A program made the position numbers and the translations under genes. Under the pieces are notes generated by a model. It did no database searches, was not told the origin of the DNA, and worked only from the letters and a program-made list of their open reading frames with translations. From Obrimoposthia wandeli (Eukaryota), in assembly GCA_977020255.1 (NCBI GenBank), contig CDROCS010000253.1, forward strand, positions 2,356,001 to 2,420,000: a stretch of DNA of 64,000 bases. The letters run 5' to 3'. Below, piece by piece: positions 10,027 to 53,189 of this stretch (positions are counted from its first letter, which is position 1; each line of letters begins with the position of its first letter).

Positions 10027-10042
10027 TGGCACTCTATTTGCA
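10027..10042 (+). promoter_or_regulatory. sigma54 promoter for the flgF operon
   Basis: TGGCACTCTATTTGCA, near-perfect consensus, after the flgE terminator. Confidence 0.8.
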
Positions 10043-10080: not shown

Positions 10081-10824
10081 ATGGATAAGTTGCTTTATAT
10101 CGCCATGAGTGGCGCTAAACAAAACATGCAAGCCTTATCAATTAATGCCAACAATCTGGCGAATGCTAAAACTACAGGCTTTAAAGCTGATTTAGCACAA
10201 GCACGAAGTATGCAGGCTTATGGTGAAGGCATGCCTTCACGTGTTTTTTCAATGACAGAGCGTGCTAGCCAAAATTTTGACTCAGGATCTATTCTTCATA
10301 CCGGTCGGTCATTAGACGTAGCTGTTGAAGGTGATGGTTTCTTTGCGGTTCAAGCAGAAGATGGCCAAGAAGCTTACACACGTGGCGGCCACTTTCGCCT
10401 AACCGAAACCGGAGCGTTAGAAACTAACGATGGGGAACTCGTTATAGGTGAAGATGGACCTATAACGTTACCGCTACCAGTGAATAATATTCAAATTAGT
10501 CGCGATGGCACCATCATGGTACAGCCTGAAGGTGCTCCAAATAGTGTTAAAGAAGAGGTTGGCCGTATAAAAATGGTTAACCCTGACACGCGTCTTGTTG
10601 AAAAAGGCAATGATGGTTTATTTCGCGCTAAAAATGGTGGGCAATTAGTTGCCGATATTAATGTCAATGTTCTTAGCGGTGCACTCGAATCGAGTAATGT
10701 TAACCCTATAAACGAAATGACAGAAATGATTGCTTTACAGCGTCAGTTTGAAATGCAACTAAAAATGATGAAAACAGCAGAAGAAATTGATTCAAGCGCA
10801 GCTTCTCTATTAAAAGCTTTCTAA
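10081..10824 (+). CDS. flgF: Proximal rod protein FlgF
   Basis: 'ANNLANAKTTGFKAD', 'TGRSLDVAVEG', 'LESSNVNP'. Confidence 0.95.
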   Translation: MDKLLYIAMSGAKQNMQALSINANNLANAKTTGFKADLAQARSMQAYGEGMPSRVFSMTERASQNFDSGSILHTGRSLDVAVEGDGFFAVQAEDGQEAYTRGGHFRLTETGALETNDGELVIGEDGPITLPLPVNNIQISRDGTIMVQPEGAPNSVKEEVGRIKMVNPDTRLVEKGNDGLFRAKNGGQLVADINVNVLSGALESSNVNPINEMTEMIALQRQFEMQLKMMKTAEEIDSSAASLLKAF

Positions 10825-18588: not shown

Positions 18589-18604
18589 TGGCACGGTTCA
18601 TGCT
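18589..18604 (+). promoter_or_regulatory. sigma54 promoter for flagellin 1
   Basis: TGGCACGGTTCATGCT, GG-N10-GC. Confidence 0.7.
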
Positions 18605-18761: not shown

Positions 18762-20327
18762 ATGGCCATAACAGTCAATACAAATGTAACCTCGTTGAAT
18801 GCTCAACGTAACTTATCAAAATCAGGCGAATCCTTATCTACGTCAATGCAACGTTTGTCTTCTGGTATGCGTATCAACAGCGCCAAAGATGATGCCGCCG
18901 GTATGCAAATATCCACACGTTTAACCTCACAAATTAGTGGTTTAGCCGTGGCCCAGCGTAATGCTAACGATGGTATCTCAATGGCGCAAACAGCAGAGGG
19001 TGCATTGCAATCTTCTACTGATATATTACAACGTATGCGTGACTTGTCTTTACAATCATCAAATGGTTCGAACTCAACGGCTGACCGTGAAGCACTGCAA
19101 AAAGAAGTATCTGCATTACAGTCAGAATTAACCCGTATTTCTGAAACGACTACGTTCGGTGGACAAAACCTATTAGATGGTAGTTATGGTACACAACAGT
19201 TTCAAGTAGGCTCAGACAGTAATCAAACCATTGGCGTTACACTTAACTCAGCAGCAGCAGAGGATATCGGTTTAAGCGGTAAGGGGTTCGATATTGCGGC
19301 TATTGCTGGTTTTTCAGGTGCAAGCGAAACAGCGAAAATATTTACAACGGATGATAAATTAAGTATTACCACGGGGGGTAAAACAAACGAACTTACCTTA
19401 ACAACAGGTATGAGTGCAGCTGATCTAGCAGGCCAAGTAAACAGTACTGAAGGTGTTTTCGGAGTGAGCGCAACAACACAGGTTGCTCTTGGCTCGTTTG
19501 CAACTGATACAACGGGTGGCGATATTATAACATTAAATGTTTCGGGTGTTGAAGTCGTTGTACCTGCTTTGACCGCAGGCGACGATAATGACGCTATTGT
19601 TGCTGATATTAATACTGCAGTGAATGGTAATACAGCCATCAAAGAAGCGCTAGCAGCGAAAGGTATTGTCGCAACAGTTGACCCAGATAGTGATTTAATG
19701 GTTTTTACCAATACTAATGGTGAGAATATTGATGTAACCATGAAGATAGCAGCTGGCGCTACAGATACCGGTGGTGCTAGTGCTGCTGGTACCGTCTCAG
19801 CTTACGATGGTGCAGCAGCACTTGCGGGTGGTACTGTAACGACTGCAGATGCAGATGTAACTGCCAACAATACTACAACAGTAACTGGTCGCTTAGATTA
19901 TACTAATGCAGTTTTGGATGTTGACAATGCAACATTAACCGTTACGGGCGGGGGAACGCTTAATGGGGCCACATCATCTTCAGCTGCTCTTGATACAACA
20001 GTCAAATTATCATCTATTGCTAAGGTAGATATTTCTACTGCAGGCGGCTCACAGTCTGCTATTGATGTAATTGACGCAGCATTAGCTTCAATTGGCGATA
20101 CGCGCGCCGATTTAGGTGCTACACAAAACCGTTTTAGTCAAACCATTGGTAACTTGGCAAATATTCAAGAAAATGCTTCTGCATCACGTAGCCGTATTCA
20201 AGACACTGACTATGCGACCGAAACGGCAGTAATGACTAAGAACCAAATATTGCAACAAGCCGGTACCTCAATTTTGGCGCAAGCGAACCAAATACCACAA
20301 GCAGCTATTAGCTTAATTGGTGGTTAG
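18762..20327 (+). CDS. fliC: Flagellin 1 (521 aa)
   Basis: Conserved D0/D1 termini '[17 protein letters not shown]', '[11 protein letters not shown]', '[14 protein letters not shown]'. Confidence 0.97.
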
Positions 20328-20496: not shown

Positions 20497-20578
20497 AAAT
20501 AACTTTTAATTTTTCTCGAAGTTAACGCCACATATCCGTTTATAATAAAAACACATCGCATCAAAAGGATTTTTGACT

Positions 20579-21037
20579 ATGCCACGTAATAATCTCACGA
20601 AAGGAAGAGTATCCCTCAAACATCATATTTACCATATAACAACATGTACAGAAAACCGTCAGCCATTCTTTTATAATTTCCAATGCGCTCGTCTTTTGAT
20701 AAATGAAATGAAAAAATTAGTAGATACGCAAGAAGTAAGCTCTATTACTTGGGTAATCATGCCGGACCATTTACATTGGTTATTTCAGTTAACGTCGGAT
20801 AATAATTTAGCAAAAGTTATTCAAACATTAAAAGGGCGTAGTTCAAGGATCATTAATTTGTACGACAAGGGATTAGGTTTTTCATGGCAACGCGGTTTTT
20901 ATGATCACGCAATTAGAACCGAAGAAAGTTTATTATCCGTATCACGTTACATTGTAGCGAACCCATTACGAGCAGGTTTAGCTGATAATGCAGGGGATTA
21001 TCCATTATGGGATTCGGTGTATTTACAAGATGAATAA
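20579..21037 (+). mobile_element. rayT: REP-associated tyrosine transposase (RAYT / TnpA-REP, HUH Y1 family)
   Basis: 'YHITTCT', HUH motif 'IMPDHLHW', 'WQRGFYDHAIR', catalytic Tyr in 'RYIVANP'; GTAG REPs on both sides; ATG 20579 preferred over TTG 20573. Confidence 0.92.
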
Positions 21038-21365: not shown

Positions 21366-22928
21366 ATGGCTATTTCAGTAAATACCAATGTTACCTCATT
21401 AAATGCACAACGTAACTTATCAAAATCAGGCGCGGCACTAAGCCAGTCGATGGAACGTTTATCATCGGGTATGCGAATCAACAGTGCAAAAGATGATGCC
21501 GCAGGTATGCAGATTGCTACACGTTTAACCTCGCAAATTAGTGGTTTAGGTGTTGCACAACGTAATGCCAACGACGGTATTTCAATGGCACAAACGGCAG
21601 AGGGTGCATTGCAATCTTCTACTGATATATTACAACGTATGCGTGACTTGTCTTTACAATCATCAAATGGTTCGAACTCAACGTCTGACCGTGAAGCACT
21701 GCAAAAAGAAGTTTCAGCATTACAATCAGAATTAACCCGTATTTCTGAAACGACTACGTTCGGTGGACAAAACCTATTAGATGGTAGTTATGGTACACAA
21801 CAGTTTCAAGTAGGCTCAGACAGTAATCAAACCATTGGCGTTACACTTAACTCAGCAGCAGCAGAAGATATTGGTTTAAGCGGTAAAGGTTTTGATATTG
21901 CTGCTATTGCAGGTTTTTCAAGCGCGAGTGAAACAGCAAAAACATTTGCAACGACAGATAAATTAAGCATTACCACGGGGGGTAAAACCAACGATCTTAC
22001 CTTGACAACAGGTATGAGTGCAGCAGATTTAGCAGGCCAGGTAAACAGTAGTGAAGGTGTTTTCGGAGTGAGCGCAACAACACAGGTTGCTCTTGGCTCG
22101 TTTGCAACTGATACAACGGGTGGCGATATTATAACATTAAATGTTTCGGGTGTTGAAGTCGTTGTACCTGCTTTGACCGCAGGCGACGATAATGACGCTA
22201 TTGTTGCTGATATTAATACTGCAGTGAATGGTAATACAGCCATCAAAGAAGCGCTAGCAGCGAAAGGTATTGTCGCAACAGTTGACCCAGATAGTGATTT
22301 AATGGTTTTTACCAATACTAATGGTGAGAATATTGATGTAACCATGAAGATAGCAGCTGGCGCTACAGATACCGGTGGTGCTAGTGCTGCTGGTACCGTC
22401 TCAGCTTACGATGGTGCAGCAGCACTTGCGGGTGGTACTGTAACGACTGCAGATGCAGATGTAACTGCCAACAATACTACAACAGTAACTGGTCGCTTAG
22501 ATTATACTAATGCAGTTTTGGATGTTGACAATGCAACATTAACCGTTACTGGCGCGGGAACGCTTAATGGGGCCACATCATCTTCAGCTGCTCTTGATAC
22601 AACAGTCAAATTATCATCTATTGCTAAGGTAGATATTTCTACTTCAGGTGGCTCTCAGTCAGCTATTGATGTTATTGATGCAGCATTACAACAAATTGGT
22701 AATGAGCGTGCCGAGTTAGGTGCAACACAAAACCGTTTTAGTCAAACTATTGGTAACTTGGCGAATATCCAAGAAAATGCTTCAGCATCACGTAGCCGTA
22801 TTCAAGATACTGACTATGCGACAGAAACAGCGCAAATGACCAAGAACCAAATATTGCAACAAGCCGGTACCTCAATTTTGGCGCAAGCTAACCAATTACC
22901 ACAAGCAGCATTAAGCTTAATTGGTTAA
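21366..22928 (+). CDS. fliC: Flagellin 2 (520 aa)
   Basis: Same conserved termini as flagellin 1; colinear with it at a constant 2604-nt offset. Confidence 0.97.
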
Positions 22929-25233: not shown

Positions 25234-25602
25234 TTAATATTTTTGATAGGACTTTGCGACTTTTTTACTCTTTTTAAGTTTTAATACTTGTTCAGCTATT
25301 TCTTGTTTACATATTGCAGACTTGGTCGTTAATTCACTATCAAGGATAAGCATTTCTTGTAGAAGAGCCTTATGTGAACTTACATCTTCAGTAGTGTGAT
25401 GTTCAAATAAGTGAGTTATTAATGTTTGTCTTGTGAACACTAAATCAGTTAGTTCTTTATTCGAGAGTAGATCTTCAGTGTTTTCTACAGGTGAATTTTT
25501 TTTGGTGGGCTGTATGCTAATTTGTACTGATAATATACGCGACAATAGCTGCCGCGATACATCGTTGATTTGCTCAATAGACTCTTTTGTGTCAAAAGTC
25601 AC
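25234..25602 (-). CDS. FliT-like flagellar chaperone
   Basis: 122 aa helical protein with FliT-like pattern 'LVFTRQTLITHLF...LLQEMLILDSEL...LKKSKKVAKSYQKY'; GTG start overlaps the fliS stop (TAGTG). Confidence 0.6.
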   Translation of the reverse strand: MTFDTKESIEQINDVSRQLLSRILSVQISIQPTKKNSPVENTEDLLSNKELTDLVFTRQTLITHLFEHHTTEDVSSHKALLQEMLILDSELTTKSAICKQEIAEQVLKLKKSKKVAKSYQKY

Positions 25603-26000
25603 TAAAAACTGACCTGACCTTGAGTCTCAAAAGGTATAGAGTCCCAACCCGCCTTTATTGGTAATAGAATTTGGATGACTTCTTCTAACTTATCAGCGTC
25701 ATTATTAGTACTAGCGACTAATAGCTGCTCTGAACAAAACTTATAAAGAGAAGCTAAATTTTGTGATACTTCACCGCCTTGTTTAAAATCAAGAGAGCCT
25801 TCTAAAACGCCAATAATAGCGATCGCATTAGATAGCTCAGTGCCTTTTTTTTCAAAGTTATTTTGTGAAATAGCGCCTTTAGCGGTAGCGATATTACCTA
25901 ATAACTTTTGAAATAGCATAGCAACTAACTGATAAGGCGAAGCTTGCTGAGCCATGCTCTTATTGGTTTGATGATATTTTTTAAGTGATGCATGTGTCAT
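25602..26000 (-). CDS. fliS: Flagellin export chaperone FliS
   Basis: 'ASPYQLVAMLF', 'LEGSLDFKQGGEVSQNLASLYKF', 'IKAGWDSI'; ATG 26000 follows SD AGGAGG. Confidence 0.93.
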   Translation of the reverse strand: MTHASLKKYHQTNKSMAQQASPYQLVAMLFQKLLGNIATAKGAISQNNFEKKGTELSNAIAIIGVLEGSLDFKQGGEVSQNLASLYKFCSEQLLVASTNNDADKLEEVIQILLPIKAGWDSIPFETQGQVSF

Positions 26001-26027
26001 AGACACCTCCTAGTTTACTATAATGTT

Positions 26028-26097: not shown

Positions 26098-26382
26098 CTA
26101 AATTAAGGGGTGGTTATTTACGGTTACAGCAAGGCCTTCATTTTTTGCTTTTGTATAGGCTTGTTGTAATACGTTATGGGTTATATCTTCTTCATTGTTA
26201 ATAACGCCGTTGCTCAATACTTCAATATTATCCCAACCACGAGCGACTAAATATTCTTCAATTTGGCTAAGTTGCTGTTCGAAAGGCATTTCCCGTGAGA
26301 ACATATTAAATTCGTGACGTGTGCCTTTAGTGAGTTCTTCATTATCATGCATTAATTCAGCAGTACCGTTTATGATTAACAT
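26098..26382 (-). CDS. Hypothetical acidic protein (94 aa)
   Basis: ATG with SD-like gtagg; no signal peptide or transmembrane segment; lies between proteolytic flagellin and fliS; no family recognised. Confidence 0.75.
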   Translation of the reverse strand: MLIINGTAELMHDNEELTKGTRHEFNMFSREMPFEQQLSQIEEYLVARGWDNIEVLSNGVINNEEDITHNVLQQAYTKAKNEGLAVTVNNHPLI

Positions 26383-26434: not shown

Positions 26435-26450
26435 TGCTTTTTTTGTGCCA
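26435..26450 (-). promoter_or_regulatory. Putative sigma54 promoter for the 94-aa ORF (-fliS-fliT)
   Basis: Minus strand TGGCACAAAAAAAGCA, GG-N10-GC, about 50 nt before the ATG. Confidence 0.5.
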
Positions 26451-26578: not shown

Positions 26579-28345
26579 TTAACCTAATAATTTAAGTATA
26601 GACTCTGTTGCTATATTGCTCTGGGCAAGTAAAGATGTCGTTGCCTGTTGCTTTATTTGTAAGGAGGTAAGTTTTGCTGTTTCTGTGGCGTAATCTGTAT
26701 CTTGGATGCGAGAACGGCTGGCCGAAACATTTTCACTTATATTGCTTAAATTGGTGATGGTGTACTCTAATCTATTCATAAATGCCCCTAAACCAGAACG
26801 CTGCTGAACTAAATAATTTAGCGCTTCATCAATGCTGTTTATTGCAGATTGTGAATTTGTGACTAAGTTAATATTTTCTAATCCCATATTTTTGCTTGAA
26901 AAGCCTGCAAGTTCAAGATCTATTATTTGATTAGCATCAGCCCCCACTTGAAATGCTGTTTTTTTACCGCTTAACGTAAGGTCAGCACTATAATCTTGTA
27001 AAGCGACTTCATTAAATATGGTTGGATCCCAACCTACGTTTGAGGCAAAATCTGCTGGGCTTGCGTCATTATCACCACTAACAAAATAAGTATCAAAGTC
27101 TGCGGTGGTGCTTGATCTATTAGCACCTACAATGGTTTCGGCTTTACTGGGACCACCAGAGGCATCTAAACCACCAAAAGCACCATTATCAGCATTAGCC
27201 ATGTTAATATTTGCCGTAACGAAGTCTTGAAAAACACTACCCGTGTCCATTAATGCAGTTTCTAATGCCGCATTATTGGCAAAGGTTCCTTCTGCAGCAA
27301 GGGCATCGTCGAATGTTGCATTAGCAGAAAGGCTAGTCATAATTGCTTTTATGCCGGACTCTCCTATTTGATCTTCTAAATAACGCATGGCGATATATCC
27401 ACCGGAATAAACACCGGCTACCTCTATGCCATTGGTAAGTGGTGCATTATTATCATCAAAGATTGTTTTTAATTGGGCTTTAATAGCTAGAACACTATTT
27501 CCTGCTGATATATCATCAGCGACACGATCATCAGCACCACTTACTGCCTCAGCAGTTCCTTCAACAAACCAAGTAGGCACGGATGTTAAATCCATATTGT
27601 TCGCCATTACGGCATGGGTCATTTCGTGCAGTAAAGTAGATTTTAACCGAGCGGTTGTAGTGTCATCAAGTGTTGAAAAGTCATCTAAATCAATAGTCAT
27701 TACTAAATTAGTACCAGGATTCCCCGTACTTCCTAAGTATGAAACAGAGGCAAGTTTACCGCTAACACCATCAATATTCTCTAAATCTATTTTCATTTTT
27801 GAACCATCACCTGATAGCCCAAGCACACTTTGAATGATGTCTTCAGACTCGGCCAATACGCCACTTTGCAATATTTGAACAATGTTACGTTCAGCGTCAC
27901 TGCCACTATTAGAAGATACTTCATCTGTTTGTTCGAACAGTTGGTTACCACCAAACGTTGTGGTGCTATTAATACGATCTAATTCTGCTTTTAATTGCTC
28001 TGACTCTTTGTTGAGGGCTTCTCTGTCTACTTCAGATAATGCTCCATTACTTGCTTGGAGTGATAAATCTCGTATTCTAATTAAAATATCTGTTGACTGG
28101 GTTAAAGCCCCCTCTGCTGTTTGCGCCATTGAAATACCATCATTTGCATTACGCTGGGCGACAGCTAAGCCGTTAACTTGCGAGGTCAATCGATTCGATA
28201 TTTGTAAACCTGCGGCATCATCAGCGGCTGAGTTAATGCGCATACCAGATGACAGGCGAGAAAAAGTCACAGCTAACTTATTAGTGTTATCTGTTAGTTG
28301 TCGCTGTAAAAATAAGCTTGTCATGTTGGTATTTATTGTGTTCAC
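26579..28345 (-). CDS. Proteolytic flagellin (flagellinolysin-type): flagellin D0/D1 with an inserted zinc metallopeptidase domain
   Basis: Flagellin N-terminus '[17 protein letters not shown]' and C-terminus '[11 protein letters not shown]'; central 'TLLHEMTHAVM' (27614-27628) and 'WFVEGTAE' (EGTAE 27548-27562). Start re-placed at GTG 28345 (588 aa). Confidence 0.92.
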   Translation of the reverse strand: MNTINTNMTSLFLQRQLTDNTNKLAVTFSRLSSGMRINSAADDAAGLQISNRLTSQVNGLAVAQRNANDGISMAQTAEGALTQSTDILIRIRDLSLQASNGALSEVDREALNKESEQLKAELDRINSTTTFGGNQLFEQTDEVSSNSGSDAERNIVQILQSGVLAESEDIIQSVLGLSGDGSKMKIDLENIDGVSGKLASVSYLGSTGNPGTNLVMTIDLDDFSTLDDTTTARLKSTLLHEMTHAVMANNMDLTSVPTWFVEGTAEAVSGADDRVADDISAGNSVLAIKAQLKTIFDDNNAPLTNGIEVAGVYSGGYIAMRYLEDQIGESGIKAIMTSLSANATFDDALAAEGTFANNAALETALMDTGSVFQDFVTANINMANADNGAFGGLDASGGPSKAETIVGANRSSTTADFDTYFVSGDNDASPADFASNVGWDPTIFNEVALQDYSADLTLSGKKTAFQVGADANQIIDLELAGFSSKNMGLENINLVTNSQSAINSIDEALNYLVQQRSGLGAFMNRLEYTITNLSNISENVSASRSRIQDTDYATETAKLTSLQIKQQATTSLLAQSNIATESILKLLG

Positions 28346-28382
28346 GTAAATATTATCTTTAATAATTAAGTGTGATAGTAGT

Positions 28383-28409
28383 GTATCGGCATAGCGTATG
28401 AGATCTTTA
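28383..28409 (-). promoter_or_regulatory. sigma28 promoter for the proteolytic flagellin
   Basis: Minus strand TAAA-N15-GCCGATAC, 38 nt before GTG 28345. Confidence 0.8.
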
Positions 28410-28589
28410 GCGTAAATAGAATTTAAACTAAAGCTCTCATCTATTAGCTTAATTTTGATATATGACAATAAAATGACGAGTACGCGTCAAGTTTTTGTTG
28501 CTTAAAATCAATTAACGGCTAAAATTGCTTGAAACGCTATAAAACAATATTAAAAATAGCACGTTAGTATTAGCCGTGAAGAGTTAAGT

Positions 28590-33060: not shown

Positions 33061-33076
33061 TGGCACTATGCTTGCA
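33061..33076 (+). promoter_or_regulatory. sigma54 promoter for the fliE operon
   Basis: TGGCACTATGCTTGCA, near-perfect consensus. Confidence 0.85.
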
Positions 33077-52469: not shown

Positions 52470-53189
52470 GTGGTAAAAGCGAATAGCTATAATAATCAAA
52501 TTGATAAAACAGCTCTTCTTGAACAACAAACTGTTTTAGTTAAGCGCATTGCTTATCATCTTTTAGCAAGGCTTCCTGCAAGCGTTCAAGTAGATGACTT
52601 GATACAATCAGGAATGATTGGTTTATTTGAAGCGGCAAATAATTTTGATAACAGTAAAGGCGCGAGTTTTGAAACTTTTGCTGGAATTCGAATCCGTGGC
52701 GCCATGTTAGATGAAATACGTCGAGGTGATTGGACACCACGATCTGTTCATAAAAATAGCCGAATGATTAGTGGAGCGATAAAACAACTTGAGGCACAAT
52801 TTGGTCGAGATGTTTCTGATATTGAAGTTGCTGAAAAACTTGATATTTCACTCAATGACTACCATCATATATTAAGTGAAGTGAGTACAGGAAAAATTCT
52901 CGGCATTGATGATCTTGGCGTTAATGAAGATGCTATAAAATTGAGTGATGACTGTCTCGGAGATGATCCATATCAACGTATTGAGCAGATTGCCTTTAAA
53001 AAGGGCTTAAGCGAATGTATTAAGTCTTTACCGGAACGAGAAGCTCTAGTACTGTCTTTATATTATGATGAAGAATTAAATTTACGAGAAATAGGGCAAG
53101 TGCTCGATGTGAGTGAATCACGGGTAAGTCAAATTCATAGTCAAGCGATGCATCGTTTAAAAGCACGTATGCAATCTTGGAGAAGTTAA
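52470..53189 (+). CDS. fliA: Flagellar sigma factor sigma28
   Basis: 'DDLIQSGMIGL', 'RIRGAMLDE', 'SESRVSQIHSQA'. Confidence 0.97.
   Translation: MVKANSYNNQIDKTALLEQQTVLVKRIAYHLLARLPASVQVDDLIQSGMIGLFEAANNFDNSKGASFETFAGIRIRGAMLDEIRRGDWTPRSVHKNSRMISGAIKQLEAQFGRDVSDIEVAEKLDISLNDYHHILSEVSTGKILGIDDLGVNEDAIKLSDDCLGDDPYQRIEQIAFKKGLSECIKSLPEREALVLSLYYDEELNLREIGQVLDVSESRVSQIHSQAMHRLKARMQSWRS

What the first reader, a model, noticed from the sequence alone, without database searches (positions are those of the whole stretch)
26579..28345. Proteolytic flagellin (flagellinolysin-type) with an intact zinc metallopeptidase active site
Seen: flagellin D0/D1 termini enclose a roughly 325-aa insert (about 26954-27930) unrelated to the variable domain of the two other flagellins. 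It contains HEMTH followed about 18 residues later by WFVEGTAE, the HExxH...E gluzincin arrangement with the catalytic Glu intact. Established: flagellinolysins such as Clostridium haemolyticum FliA(H) are flagellins carrying a surface-exposed gluzincin domain that makes the filament proteolytic. Inference: this bacterium builds a mixed filament that displays protease activity, e.g. for degrading particulate protein or biofilm matrix. If the host is a cold-adapted Colwellia-type organism, this would be a candidate cold-active enzyme.
Basis: partly seen in the sequence, partly recalled or inferred. Interest (0 to 1): 0.9.

Follow-up and report, generated by a model that had tools for sequence, protein, structure and literature searches.

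The report
Flagellinolysin: a known protease-carrying flagellin
This Colwellia-type marine bacterium has a third flagellin gene with a zinc protease domain built into it, which is real and looks intact but belongs to the flagellinolysin family described in 2017, whose published list already included a Colwellia species.

Summary
A 588-aa protein is encoded on the minus strand at 26579-28345. It has flagellin N- and C-terminal core domains around a ~325-aa insert. The insert carries HEMTH (H240/E241/H244) and, 18 residues later, WFVEGTAE (E262, A265).

The protein scores 344.6 bits (cut-off 205) on NCBIfam NF033876 'flagellinolysin'. Its nearest named relatives are annotated flagellinolysin in Colwellia, Thalassotalea and Thalassomonas. 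A confident model of the insert (pLDDT 89) matches M9 collagenases, M30 and M1 gluzincins (Z 10-12.5). H240, E241, H244 and E262 are invariant in 50 diverse relatives.

New details found here:
- A consensus sigma-28 promoter lies 36 nt upstream. The only other strict match in 64 kb is in front of flgM.
- In Colwellia and its close relatives the gene sits at a fixed site, divergent from fleQ and followed by orf94-fliS-fliT.
- The protease is inserted before the D1 beta-hairpin, unlike the variable domain of the two paralogous flagellins.
- A second nearly invariant N-x-D-x-G-A-x-G-G-x-D motif is present.

Proteolysis, filament incorporation and cold activity remain inferences. The 2017 discovery paper already listed the Colwellia piezophila ortholog, so this is ordinary.

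The parts
26579..28345 (-). Flagellinolysin gene (588 aa, GTG start, TAA stop)
   Evidence: ORF. NCBIfam NF033876 scores 344.6 bits against a cut-off of 205. Pfam finds Flagellin_N and Flagellin_C. Orthologs are named flagellinolysin.
27932..28345 (-). N-terminal D0/D1 helices (residues 1-138)
   Evidence: Pfam Flagellin_N covers residues 4-140 at E 3.8e-38. It is 66-69% identical to the two paralogous flagellins.
26954..27931 (-).
   Evidence: It has no counterpart in the paralogs. It is covered by the flagellinolysin HMM. It is 56-88% identical among Colwelliaceae orthologs, so it is not hypervariable.
27197..27895 (-). Gluzincin peptidase core (residues 151-383)
   Evidence: The AF2 model has pLDDT 89.2. 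VIA-align gives Z 12.5 to Grimontia collagenase and lugdulysin, and 11.6 and 11.2 to ColT and ColG, over model residues 1-233. The Foldseek top 50 are all M1 gluzincins.
27614..27628 (-). HEMTH zinc-binding/catalytic motif (H240, E241, H244)
   Evidence: Translation. The three residues are invariant in 50 of 50 diverse family members. The motif aligns to the HExxH of collagenase ColT.
27548..27562 (-). EGTAE: third zinc ligand E262 and 'basement' A265
   Evidence: Translation. E262 is present in 50 of 50 members and A265 in 49 of 50. It aligns to TWFEEGSAEF of ColT. An 18-residue spacer is the commonest form in the family, 87 of 135 motif instances.
27152..27196 (-). NADNGAFGGLDASGG, a nearly invariant glycine/aspartate motif after the peptidase core
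   Evidence: Translation. D386 and G388 are in 50 of 50 members; N384, G391, G392 and D394 are in at least 45 of 50. Its function is untested, and a calcium site is only a guess.
26582..26953 (-). D1 beta-hairpin (FQVGADANQIIDLEL) plus C-terminal D1/D0 helices (residues 465-588)
   Evidence: Pfam Flagellin_C covers residues 503-587. The hairpin aligns to the FQIGANAGQ hairpin of solved short flagellins 5gy2 and 6t17. In the paralogs the hairpin lies before the variable domain.
28384..28409 (-). Sigma-28 (FliA) type promoter TAAAG-N14-GCCGATA; its GCCGATAC element ends 36 nt before the GTG start
   Evidence: There are 2 matches in 64 kb against 0.04 expected, and the other one precedes flgM. 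The element is kept at the same distance in L001, L002, L004, L006, L011 and L019.
26435..26450 (-). Sigma-54-like element TGGCAC-N7-GCA between the flagellinolysin stop and orf94
   Evidence: All four matches in the window lie upstream of flagellar genes. With the strict pattern it is conserved only in C. hornerae L001.
26098..26382 (-). orf94, a conserved unknown gene downstream
   Evidence: It has no Pfam match. It is found at the same place in 13 Colwellia-type loci, but it does not travel with the gene in Thalassomonas or Ferrimonas.
25602..26006 (-). fliS (flagellin export chaperone), the only copy in the window
   Evidence: Pfam FliS at E 4.8e-34. tblastn finds a single copy in the window.
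25234..25602 (-). fliT-like gene
   Evidence: Weak Pfam FliT hit, E 2.7e-4, below the cut-off.
18762..20327 (+). Ordinary flagellin 1, with a sigma-54-type element at 18589-18604
   Evidence: Pfam and NCBIfam flagellin matches. Promoter element.
21366..22928 (+). Ordinary flagellin 2, 95% identical to flagellin 1, with TAAAG-N14-GCCGTTAC upstream
52470..53189 (+). fliA (sigma-28) gene, the factor predicted to drive the flagellinolysin promoter
   Evidence: Pfam Sigma70 regions 2, 3 and 4 in a 239-aa protein that follows the flhA and flhG-like genes.

Best explanation
The gene encodes a flagellinolysin, which is a flagellin with a complete M9-related gluzincin zinc endopeptidase domain spliced into domain D1. 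The D0/D1 helices are conserved.

Shown here:
- The protein is a full-length member of the flagellinolysin family.
- The zinc ligands H240, H244 and E262, the general base E241 and the basement residue A265 are all intact.
- The insert is predicted with confidence to adopt a gluzincin fold.
- The gene has a consensus sigma-28 promoter, like flgM.
- In Colwellia-type genomes it occupies a conserved position in the polar flagellar cluster: fleQ <-|-> flagellinolysin, orf94, fliS, fliT |<- fliD.

Inferred by analogy with the two characterised members:
- It is made late in flagellar assembly.
- It is exported through the flagellar type III channel with the help of FliS.
- It co-polymerises as a minority subunit with the two ordinary flagellins.
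- It exposes a Zn/Ca-dependent, broad-specificity endopeptidase on the filament surface. This would let a swimming or attached cell cut proteins in its immediate surroundings.
For: Family membership: NF033876 'flagellinolysin' equivalog scores 344.6 bits against a cut-off of 205, covering model positions 1-383 of 384. Pfam Flagellin_N and Flagellin_C flank the insert. There are 166 homologs, and the NCBI-named ones are called flagellinolysin in Colwellia, Thalassotalea and Thalassomonas. The protein is 69% identical to the C. piezophila protein, whose species is listed in Supplementary Table 2 of the discovery paper.

Active site: H240, E241, H244 and E262 are present in 50 of 50 diverse members and A265 in 49 of 50. 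HExxH-18-EGxAE is the commonest form in the family.

Fold: the insert model has pLDDT 89.2 and pTM 0.86. Z is 12.5 to Grimontia collagenase, 11.6 to ColT, 11.2 to ColG and 10-12 to M1 peptidases. The Foldseek top 50 are all gluzincins. The family profile aligns HExxH and TWFxEGxAEF to ColT at E 2.5e-3.

Selection: the insert is 56-88% identical among orthologs, about as conserved as the C-terminal core.

Expression: a strict sigma-28 box lies 36 nt upstream, the only other one precedes flgM, and 0.04 are expected by chance. The box is kept in six other loci, including two where the gene lies outside the flagellar cluster. fliA is in the window.

Assembly competence: the D0/D1 core is 58-69% identical to the two co-resident flagellins, and fliS lies two genes downstream.

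[quoted passage not shown] HgrFlaMP is a Ca-dependent Zn peptidase (PMC7643111).
Against: There are no expression, proteomic or enzymatic data for this organism. Activity and filament incorporation rest entirely on homology.

Pfam's own peptidase models hit only below their cut-offs: Peptidase_MA_2 scores 27.6 bits against a cut-off of 32.4, and M9 scores 18.9 against 26.

The sequences of the two characterised enzymes could not be retrieved. The calcium-site residue Asp206 of FliA(H) could therefore be matched only approximately, to D219 or D222.

Whether this bacterium's polar flagellum carries a membrane sheath, which would hide the protease, is unknown (searches found nothing).

Model coordinates could not be inspected, so the zinc-site geometry was not measured.
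Confidence: 0.85

Rival explanations
1. The protein is a secreted protease rather than a filament subunit. It uses its flagellin termini only as an export signal for the flagellar type III system and is released as a monomer, or its protease domain is clipped off.
For: The authors of the H. gracilis study raise this possibility themselves and saw autolysis and self-aggregation of the full-length protein. The D0/D1 core is more diverged from the two ordinary flagellins (58-69% identical) than those two are from each other (95%). The protease is inserted at an unusual point in D1, before the beta-hairpin.
Against: In C. haemolyticum, immunogold labelling and LC-MS/MS placed the full-length protein in filaments. 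All D0/D1 segments, including the hairpin and both terminal helices, are complete and conserved.
Confidence: 0.1
2. The domain is catalytically silent. In this reading it serves as an adhesin or a structural outer domain that merely kept a protease-like fold.
For: Outer domains of flagellins often serve adhesion or filament mechanics (general knowledge). No activity has been measured for any marine member of the family.
Against: The zinc ligands and the general base are invariant across 50 sequences that share only 26-40% identity elsewhere. The protein's only two histidines are the zinc ligands. Both members tested so far are active.
Confidence: 0.04
3. The gene is a poorly expressed or silent paralog, a leftover of horizontal transfer with no role in the present organism.
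For: The family has a patchy distribution attributed to lateral transfer. An IS200-type transposase sits nearby, between the two ordinary flagellin genes.
Against: The reading frame is intact and a consensus sigma-28 promoter is conserved across genera. The synteny is fixed in 13 Colwellia-type loci. The insert is under clear purifying selection.
Confidence: 0.03

Closest known systems
Flagellinolysin family (NCBIfam NF033876; Eckhard et al. 2017, PMC5595980), including the listed Colwellia piezophila, Thalassomonas viridans, T. actiniarum and Ferrimonas proteins
   Same: The architecture is the same: flagellin N-terminus, gluzincin insert, flagellin C-terminus. HExxH, the third-ligand Glu and the Ala basement residue are all present. 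The protein is 69% identical overall to the C. piezophila protein. Its gene neighbourhood matches the C. piezophila contig NZ_KB905162.1 that the paper used in its context figure.
   Different: Nothing differs in kind. It is another ortholog, at most 90% identical to anything in the databases searched.
Clostridium haemolyticum FliA(H), the founding characterised flagellinolysin
   Same: It has the same domain order and catalytic motifs, and it likewise co-exists with ordinary 'structural' flagellin genes inside a flagellar cluster.
   Different: The published numbering gives 25 residues between His237 and Glu262 in FliA(H). Here the spacer is 18 residues, which is the majority form of the family. 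The host is a Gram-negative marine gammaproteobacterium with a polar sigma-54/sigma-28 flagellar hierarchy. A direct sequence comparison was not possible because the FliA(H) sequence was not retrieved.
Hylemonella gracilis HgrFlaMP (PMC7643111)
   Same: It is a Gram-negative flagellinolysin, shown to be a Ca-dependent Zn endopeptidase with broad specificity.
   Different: The H. gracilis gene lies away from flagellar genes. Here the gene is embedded in the flagellar cluster next to fleQ and fliS.
M9 bacterial collagenases (ColG, ColH, ColT; Grimontia hollisae collagenase)
   Same: They share the gluzincin catalytic fold and the HExxH ... TWFxEGxAEF signature.
   Different: Sequence identity is only 13-17%. 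Pfam Peptidase_M9 scores below its cut-off. There are no collagen-binding or activator domains. Characterised flagellinolysins did not cleave collagen.

Membership tests
Flagellinolysin (proteolytic flagellin) | [quoted passage not shown] | tested here: met
   Pfam Flagellin_N covers residues 4-140 at E 3.8e-38, and Flagellin_C covers 503-587 at E 1.6e-21.
Flagellinolysin (proteolytic flagellin) | Score above the curated cut-off of the family's equivalog HMM over its full length | tested here: met
   NF033876 scores 344.6 bits against a cut-off of 205, at E 9.5e-103, covering model positions 1-383 of 384.
Flagellinolysin (proteolytic flagellin) | HExxH with both zinc-binding His residues and the general-base Glu | tested here: met
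   H240, E241 and H244 are present and invariant in 50 of 50 relatives.
Flagellinolysin (proteolytic flagellin) | Distal third zinc ligand Glu with Ala three residues later (E262/A265 in FliA(H) numbering, PMC5595980) | tested here: met
   E262-G-T-A265-E is present. It aligns to EGSAE of ColT. The Glu is in 50 of 50 relatives and the Ala in 49 of 50.
Flagellinolysin (proteolytic flagellin) | Acidic calcium-site residue upstream of HExxH (Asp206 of FliA(H)) | tested here: inconclusive
   The conserved I-D219-L-D-D222-F lies 18-21 residues before H240; D219 is in 43 of 50 relatives and D222 in 40 of 50. Exact equivalence could not be fixed without the FliA(H) sequence or model coordinates.
Flagellinolysin (proteolytic flagellin) | Thermolysin-like/M9-like gluzincin fold of the insert | tested here: met
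   The model has pLDDT 89.2. Z is 12.5, 11.6 and 11.2 to M9 collagenases and 6.8 to thermolysin. The Foldseek hits are all gluzincins.
Flagellinolysin (proteolytic flagellin) | Metal-dependent endopeptidase activity | not testable with these tools
   This needs recombinant enzyme assays.
Flagellinolysin (proteolytic flagellin) | Incorporation into the flagellar filament with the protease exposed | not testable with these tools
   The only indirect support is the sigma-28 promoter, the conserved D0/D1 core and fliS two genes downstream.
Peptidase family M9 (microbial collagenase) | Score above the Pfam PF01752 gathering threshold | tested here: not met
   It scores 18.9 bits against a cut-off of 26. 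It is related at fold and motif level only, consistent with the published view that flagellinolysins are a discrete family distant from M9.

The most novel reading that the evidence does not exclude
Two family-wide features seen here may matter, and I did not find either mentioned in the parts of the two flagellinolysin papers I read. First, the peptidase is inserted before the D1 beta-hairpin rather than at the usual D2/D3 site. Second, there is a nearly invariant N-x-D-x-G-A-x-G-G-x-D motif about 120 residues after the zinc site. If that motif were a second, regulatory calcium site, it could hold the enzyme inactive during export through the narrow flagellar channel and switch it on in calcium-rich seawater. 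In Colwellia this would add up to a cold-active, sigma-28-timed, filament-borne protease.
Probability: 0.12. Interest if true: 0.5.

Novelty: already known. Interest (0 to 1): 0.22.

Why it matters
Flagellinolysins turn the flagellar filament into a very large protease assembly. Only two have been studied biochemically, one from Clostridium and one from a freshwater betaproteobacterium, and none has a solved structure.

A Colwellia ortholog would be a convenient marine representative, and possibly a cold-adapted one, for enzymology and for asking what filament-borne proteolysis does on marine particles or sea ice. As a genome-scan finding, however, it adds a correctly recognised member to a described family rather than new biology. 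Standard annotation pipelines already name it.

Tried and rejected
1. A sequence search of the insert alone against all PDB chains found nothing meaningful. No flagellinolysin structure is deposited. The full-length hit 9n59 matched only through the flagellin core.

2. The full-length AF2 model built on 13 close orthologs was mediocre, with pLDDT 66. I replaced it with an insert-only model built on 50 diverse sequences.

3. I tried to retrieve the characterised FliA(H) and HgrFlaMP sequences for a direct alignment. Cluster look-ups of 10 representatives and a second homolog search seeded with a Clostridium flagellinolysin reached Clostridium oceanicum, Pseudoalteromonas ulvae and Anaerovibrio, but not the two characterised proteins. 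Residue equivalences to FliA(H) therefore rest on published numbering and motif logic only.

4. I tested whether orf94 is a dedicated partner of the protease, such as an inhibitor or chaperone. This looks unlikely. It accompanies fliS in Colwellia-type loci but is absent next to the flagellinolysin genes of Thalassomonas, MedPE, Thalassotalea PLHSN55 and Ferrimonas.

5. I looked for a single flagellinolysin-orf94-fliS-fliT operon. No terminator-like site was found in the 196-nt gap. A sigma-54-like element does sit there, so two co-oriented transcription units are at least as likely. This is unresolved.

6. A literature search for a flagellar sheath in Colwellia found no statement either way.

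7. A search for Colwellia flagellin protease experiments found none.

8. I did not attempt a composition-based test of cold adaptation, because it would not be decisive.

Full report
**1. What is there**

The finding's coordinates hold a minus-strand ORF, 26579..28468. The sensible start is the GTG at 28345. It yields M-N-T-I-N-T-N-M-T-S-L, the standard flagellin N-terminus, and orthologs start at the same place. The product has 588 residues, no cysteine and only two histidines.

Pfam finds Flagellin_N at residues 4-140 and Flagellin_C at 503-587. Between them are only sub-threshold hits to Peptidase_MA_2 and Peptidase_M9. HEMTH lies at residues 240-244, and WFVEGTAE follows with its first Glu 18 residues after the second His. 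That includes the insert limits (residues 139-464) and the statement that the insert is unrelated to the variable domain of the two other flagellins.

**2. Family assignment**

The curated NCBIfam equivalog model NF033876 ('flagellinolysin', flagella_HExxH) matches residues 111-518. It covers model positions 1-383 of 384 and scores 344.6 bits against a cut-off of 205.

A search of 5.8 billion proteins with the insert returned 166 relatives. Those that carry an NCBI name are 'flagellinolysin' from Colwellia hornerae (72% in the insert), several Colwellia spp., C. piezophila, Thalassotalea and Thalassomonas. The nearest hits, at 88-90%, are unnamed metagenomic proteins. An exhaustive HMMER scan of 1.84 billion cluster representatives found 320 clusters with E<=1e-3. 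Nearly all have the domain starting near residue 150 of a 550-600-aa protein.

In those representatives HExxH followed by EGxAE is nearly universal. The 18-residue spacer seen here is the commonest form, in 87 of 135 motif instances.

**3. Active site and fold**

I aligned 50 sequences that share only 26-40% identity with the query outside its own clade. In that alignment H240, E241, H244, E262, G270, Y313, D386 and G388 are invariant. W259, F260, G263, A265, E266, D272 and R274 are present in at least 48 of 50.

These correspond to the features the discovery paper uses to define the family: the HExxH ligands and general base, the distal Glu ligand, and the Ala 'basement' three residues later (PMC5595980).

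An AlphaFold2 model of the insert built on this alignment is confident, with mean pLDDT 89.2 and pTM 0.86. An unbiased structural comparison with 48,161 PDB chains gives these top matches, all over model residues 1-233:

| Match | Z |
|---|---|
| Grimontia hollisae collagenase (M9) | 12.5 |
| Lugdulysin (M30) | 12.5 |
| M1 aminopeptidases | 10-12 |
| ColT | 11.6 |
| ColG | 11.2 |
| Thermolysin | 6.8 |

Foldseek's top 50 are all M1 gluzincins. A profile of the family hits ColT by sequence at E 2.5e-3. That alignment places HExxH on HExxH and 'ptWFkEGtAEf' on 'iTWFEEGSAEF'.

This reproduces the published conclusion that the domain is a discrete gluzincin family nearest to, but distant from, M9. 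The peptidase core is residues 151-383. No flagellinolysin has a solved structure.

**4.

(a) Insertion point. The two ordinary flagellins carry the D1 beta-hairpin ([15 protein letters not shown]) right after the N-terminal helices and before their variable domain. In the flagellinolysin the hairpin (FQVGADANQIIDLEL, from residue 465) comes after the protease and leads straight into the C-terminal D1 helix. The protein is thus a 'short' flagellin with the enzyme inserted into the loop ahead of the hairpin. The same arrangement holds across the 50-sequence alignment.

(b) A second conserved motif. N384-A-D386-N-G388-A-F-G-G-L-D394-A-S-G-G is nearly invariant family-wide. Its role is unknown. 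A calcium site is a guess, prompted by the calcium dependence of HgrFlaMP.

(c) Conservation. The insert is not hypervariable. Among 12 Colwelliaceae orthologs it is 56-88% identical, similar to the C-terminal core at 57-87%.

**5. Regulation and context**

The window is a Vibrio-like polar flagellar regulon. Its gene order is flgN, flgM, flgA, cheV, cheR, flgB...L, two flagellins, flaG, fliD, then this block, fleQ, flrB, flrC, fliE ... flhA, flhF, flhG, fliA.

*Sigma-28.* A strict sigma-28 box (TAAAG-N14-GCCGATA) ends 36 nt upstream of the GTG start. Only one other exists in the 64 kb, and it lies in front of flgM, the classic sigma-28 target. Chance expectation is 0.04. The box is retained at the same distance in C. 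hornerae, Thalassotalea, two other Colwellia loci, the MedPE MAG and Ferrimonas. In the last two the gene is not in a flagellar cluster. I infer late (class IV-like) expression.

*The other flagellins.* Flagellin 1 has a sigma-54-type element (TGGCACGGTTCATGCT). Flagellin 2 has a near-consensus sigma-28 box.

*Synteny.* The gene is divergent from fleQ and is followed on the same strand by orf94, by fliS (the only copy in the window) and by a fliT-like gene. These converge on fliD. This order is conserved in 13 Colwellia, Cognaticolwellia and Thalassotalea loci. One of them is the C. piezophila contig shown in the 2017 paper's context figure.

*Operon structure.* A sigma-54-like element sits in the 196-nt gap before orf94, and no terminator was detected there. 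Whether the four genes form one transcript or two is open.

**6. Mechanism**

The shown parts are family membership, an intact catalytic set, the fold, the promoter and the synteny.

The inferred parts are FliS-assisted export, co-polymerisation with the two ordinary flagellins as a minority subunit, surface exposure, and Zn/Ca-dependent broad-specificity endoproteolysis. These rest on C. haemolyticum and H. gracilis. In C. haemolyticum the protein is the second most abundant filament protein, is labelled by immunogold, is sensitive to EDTA and is inactivated by E234A. The H. gracilis data are.

Rival readings cannot be excluded without experiments, but the conservation pattern disfavours them. 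They are a secreted monomer, a silent domain and an unexpressed paralog. An unresolved caveat is whether the filament is sheathed. The cold-activity suggestion is plausible only because the host is a Colwellia. It was not tested.

**7. Novelty**

The family was described in 2017. Its supplementary table lists Colwellia piezophila, two Thalassomonas species and Ferrimonas. NCBI has an equivalog model that names such proteins automatically.

Two other first-stage notes of this scan describe the same cassette and orf94. This is a correct identification of a known kind, so I score interest low.

Noticed in passing
window 20573-21037 (+): An IS200-type (Y1 transposase) gene sits between the two 95%-identical ordinary flagellin genes. 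Colwellia sp. 12G3 (L017) also has a 78%-identical copy near its flagellin.
   Followed up: partly
window 26098-26382 (-): orf94 is a 94-aa protein with no Pfam match. It is conserved upstream of fliS in 13 Colwellia-type loci and preceded by a sigma-54-like element. It does not accompany flagellinolysin genes that lie outside the flagellar cluster.
   Followed up: partly
window 10027-10042, 18589-18604, 26435-26450(-), 33061-33076: All four TGGCAC-N7-GCW (sigma-54-type) matches in the window lie just upstream of flagellar genes. These are the gene at 10081, flagellin 1, orf94 and fliE. Chance expectation is 0.89 matches.
   Followed up: partly
proteins P0160, P0190, P0192, P0201, P0220, P0224, P0229, P0244: Some relatives of the peptidase domain sit at about residue 330-450 of much longer proteins (about 990-1560 aa) that still begin with a flagellin-like N-terminus. 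This suggests giant flagellins with extra domains ahead of the protease.
   Followed up: no
proteins P0169, P0245, P0264: A few full-length family representatives (551-597 aa) lack any HExxH, so they are possibly inactivated flagellinolysin-like flagellins.
   Followed up: no
L010, L011, L012, L013, L018, L019: In Thalassomonas, MedPE, a Colwellia MAG, Thalassotalea PLHSN55, an uncultured gammaproteobacterium and Ferrimonas, none of the window's neighbouring flagellar genes is found within 8 kb of the flagellinolysin gene. In Thalassomonas (L010) and Ferrimonas (L019) the neighbours are unrelated genes such as SAM decarboxylase, DUF2066 and Hda. At least MedPE (L011) and Ferrimonas (L019) still keep the sigma-28 box.
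   Followed up: partly
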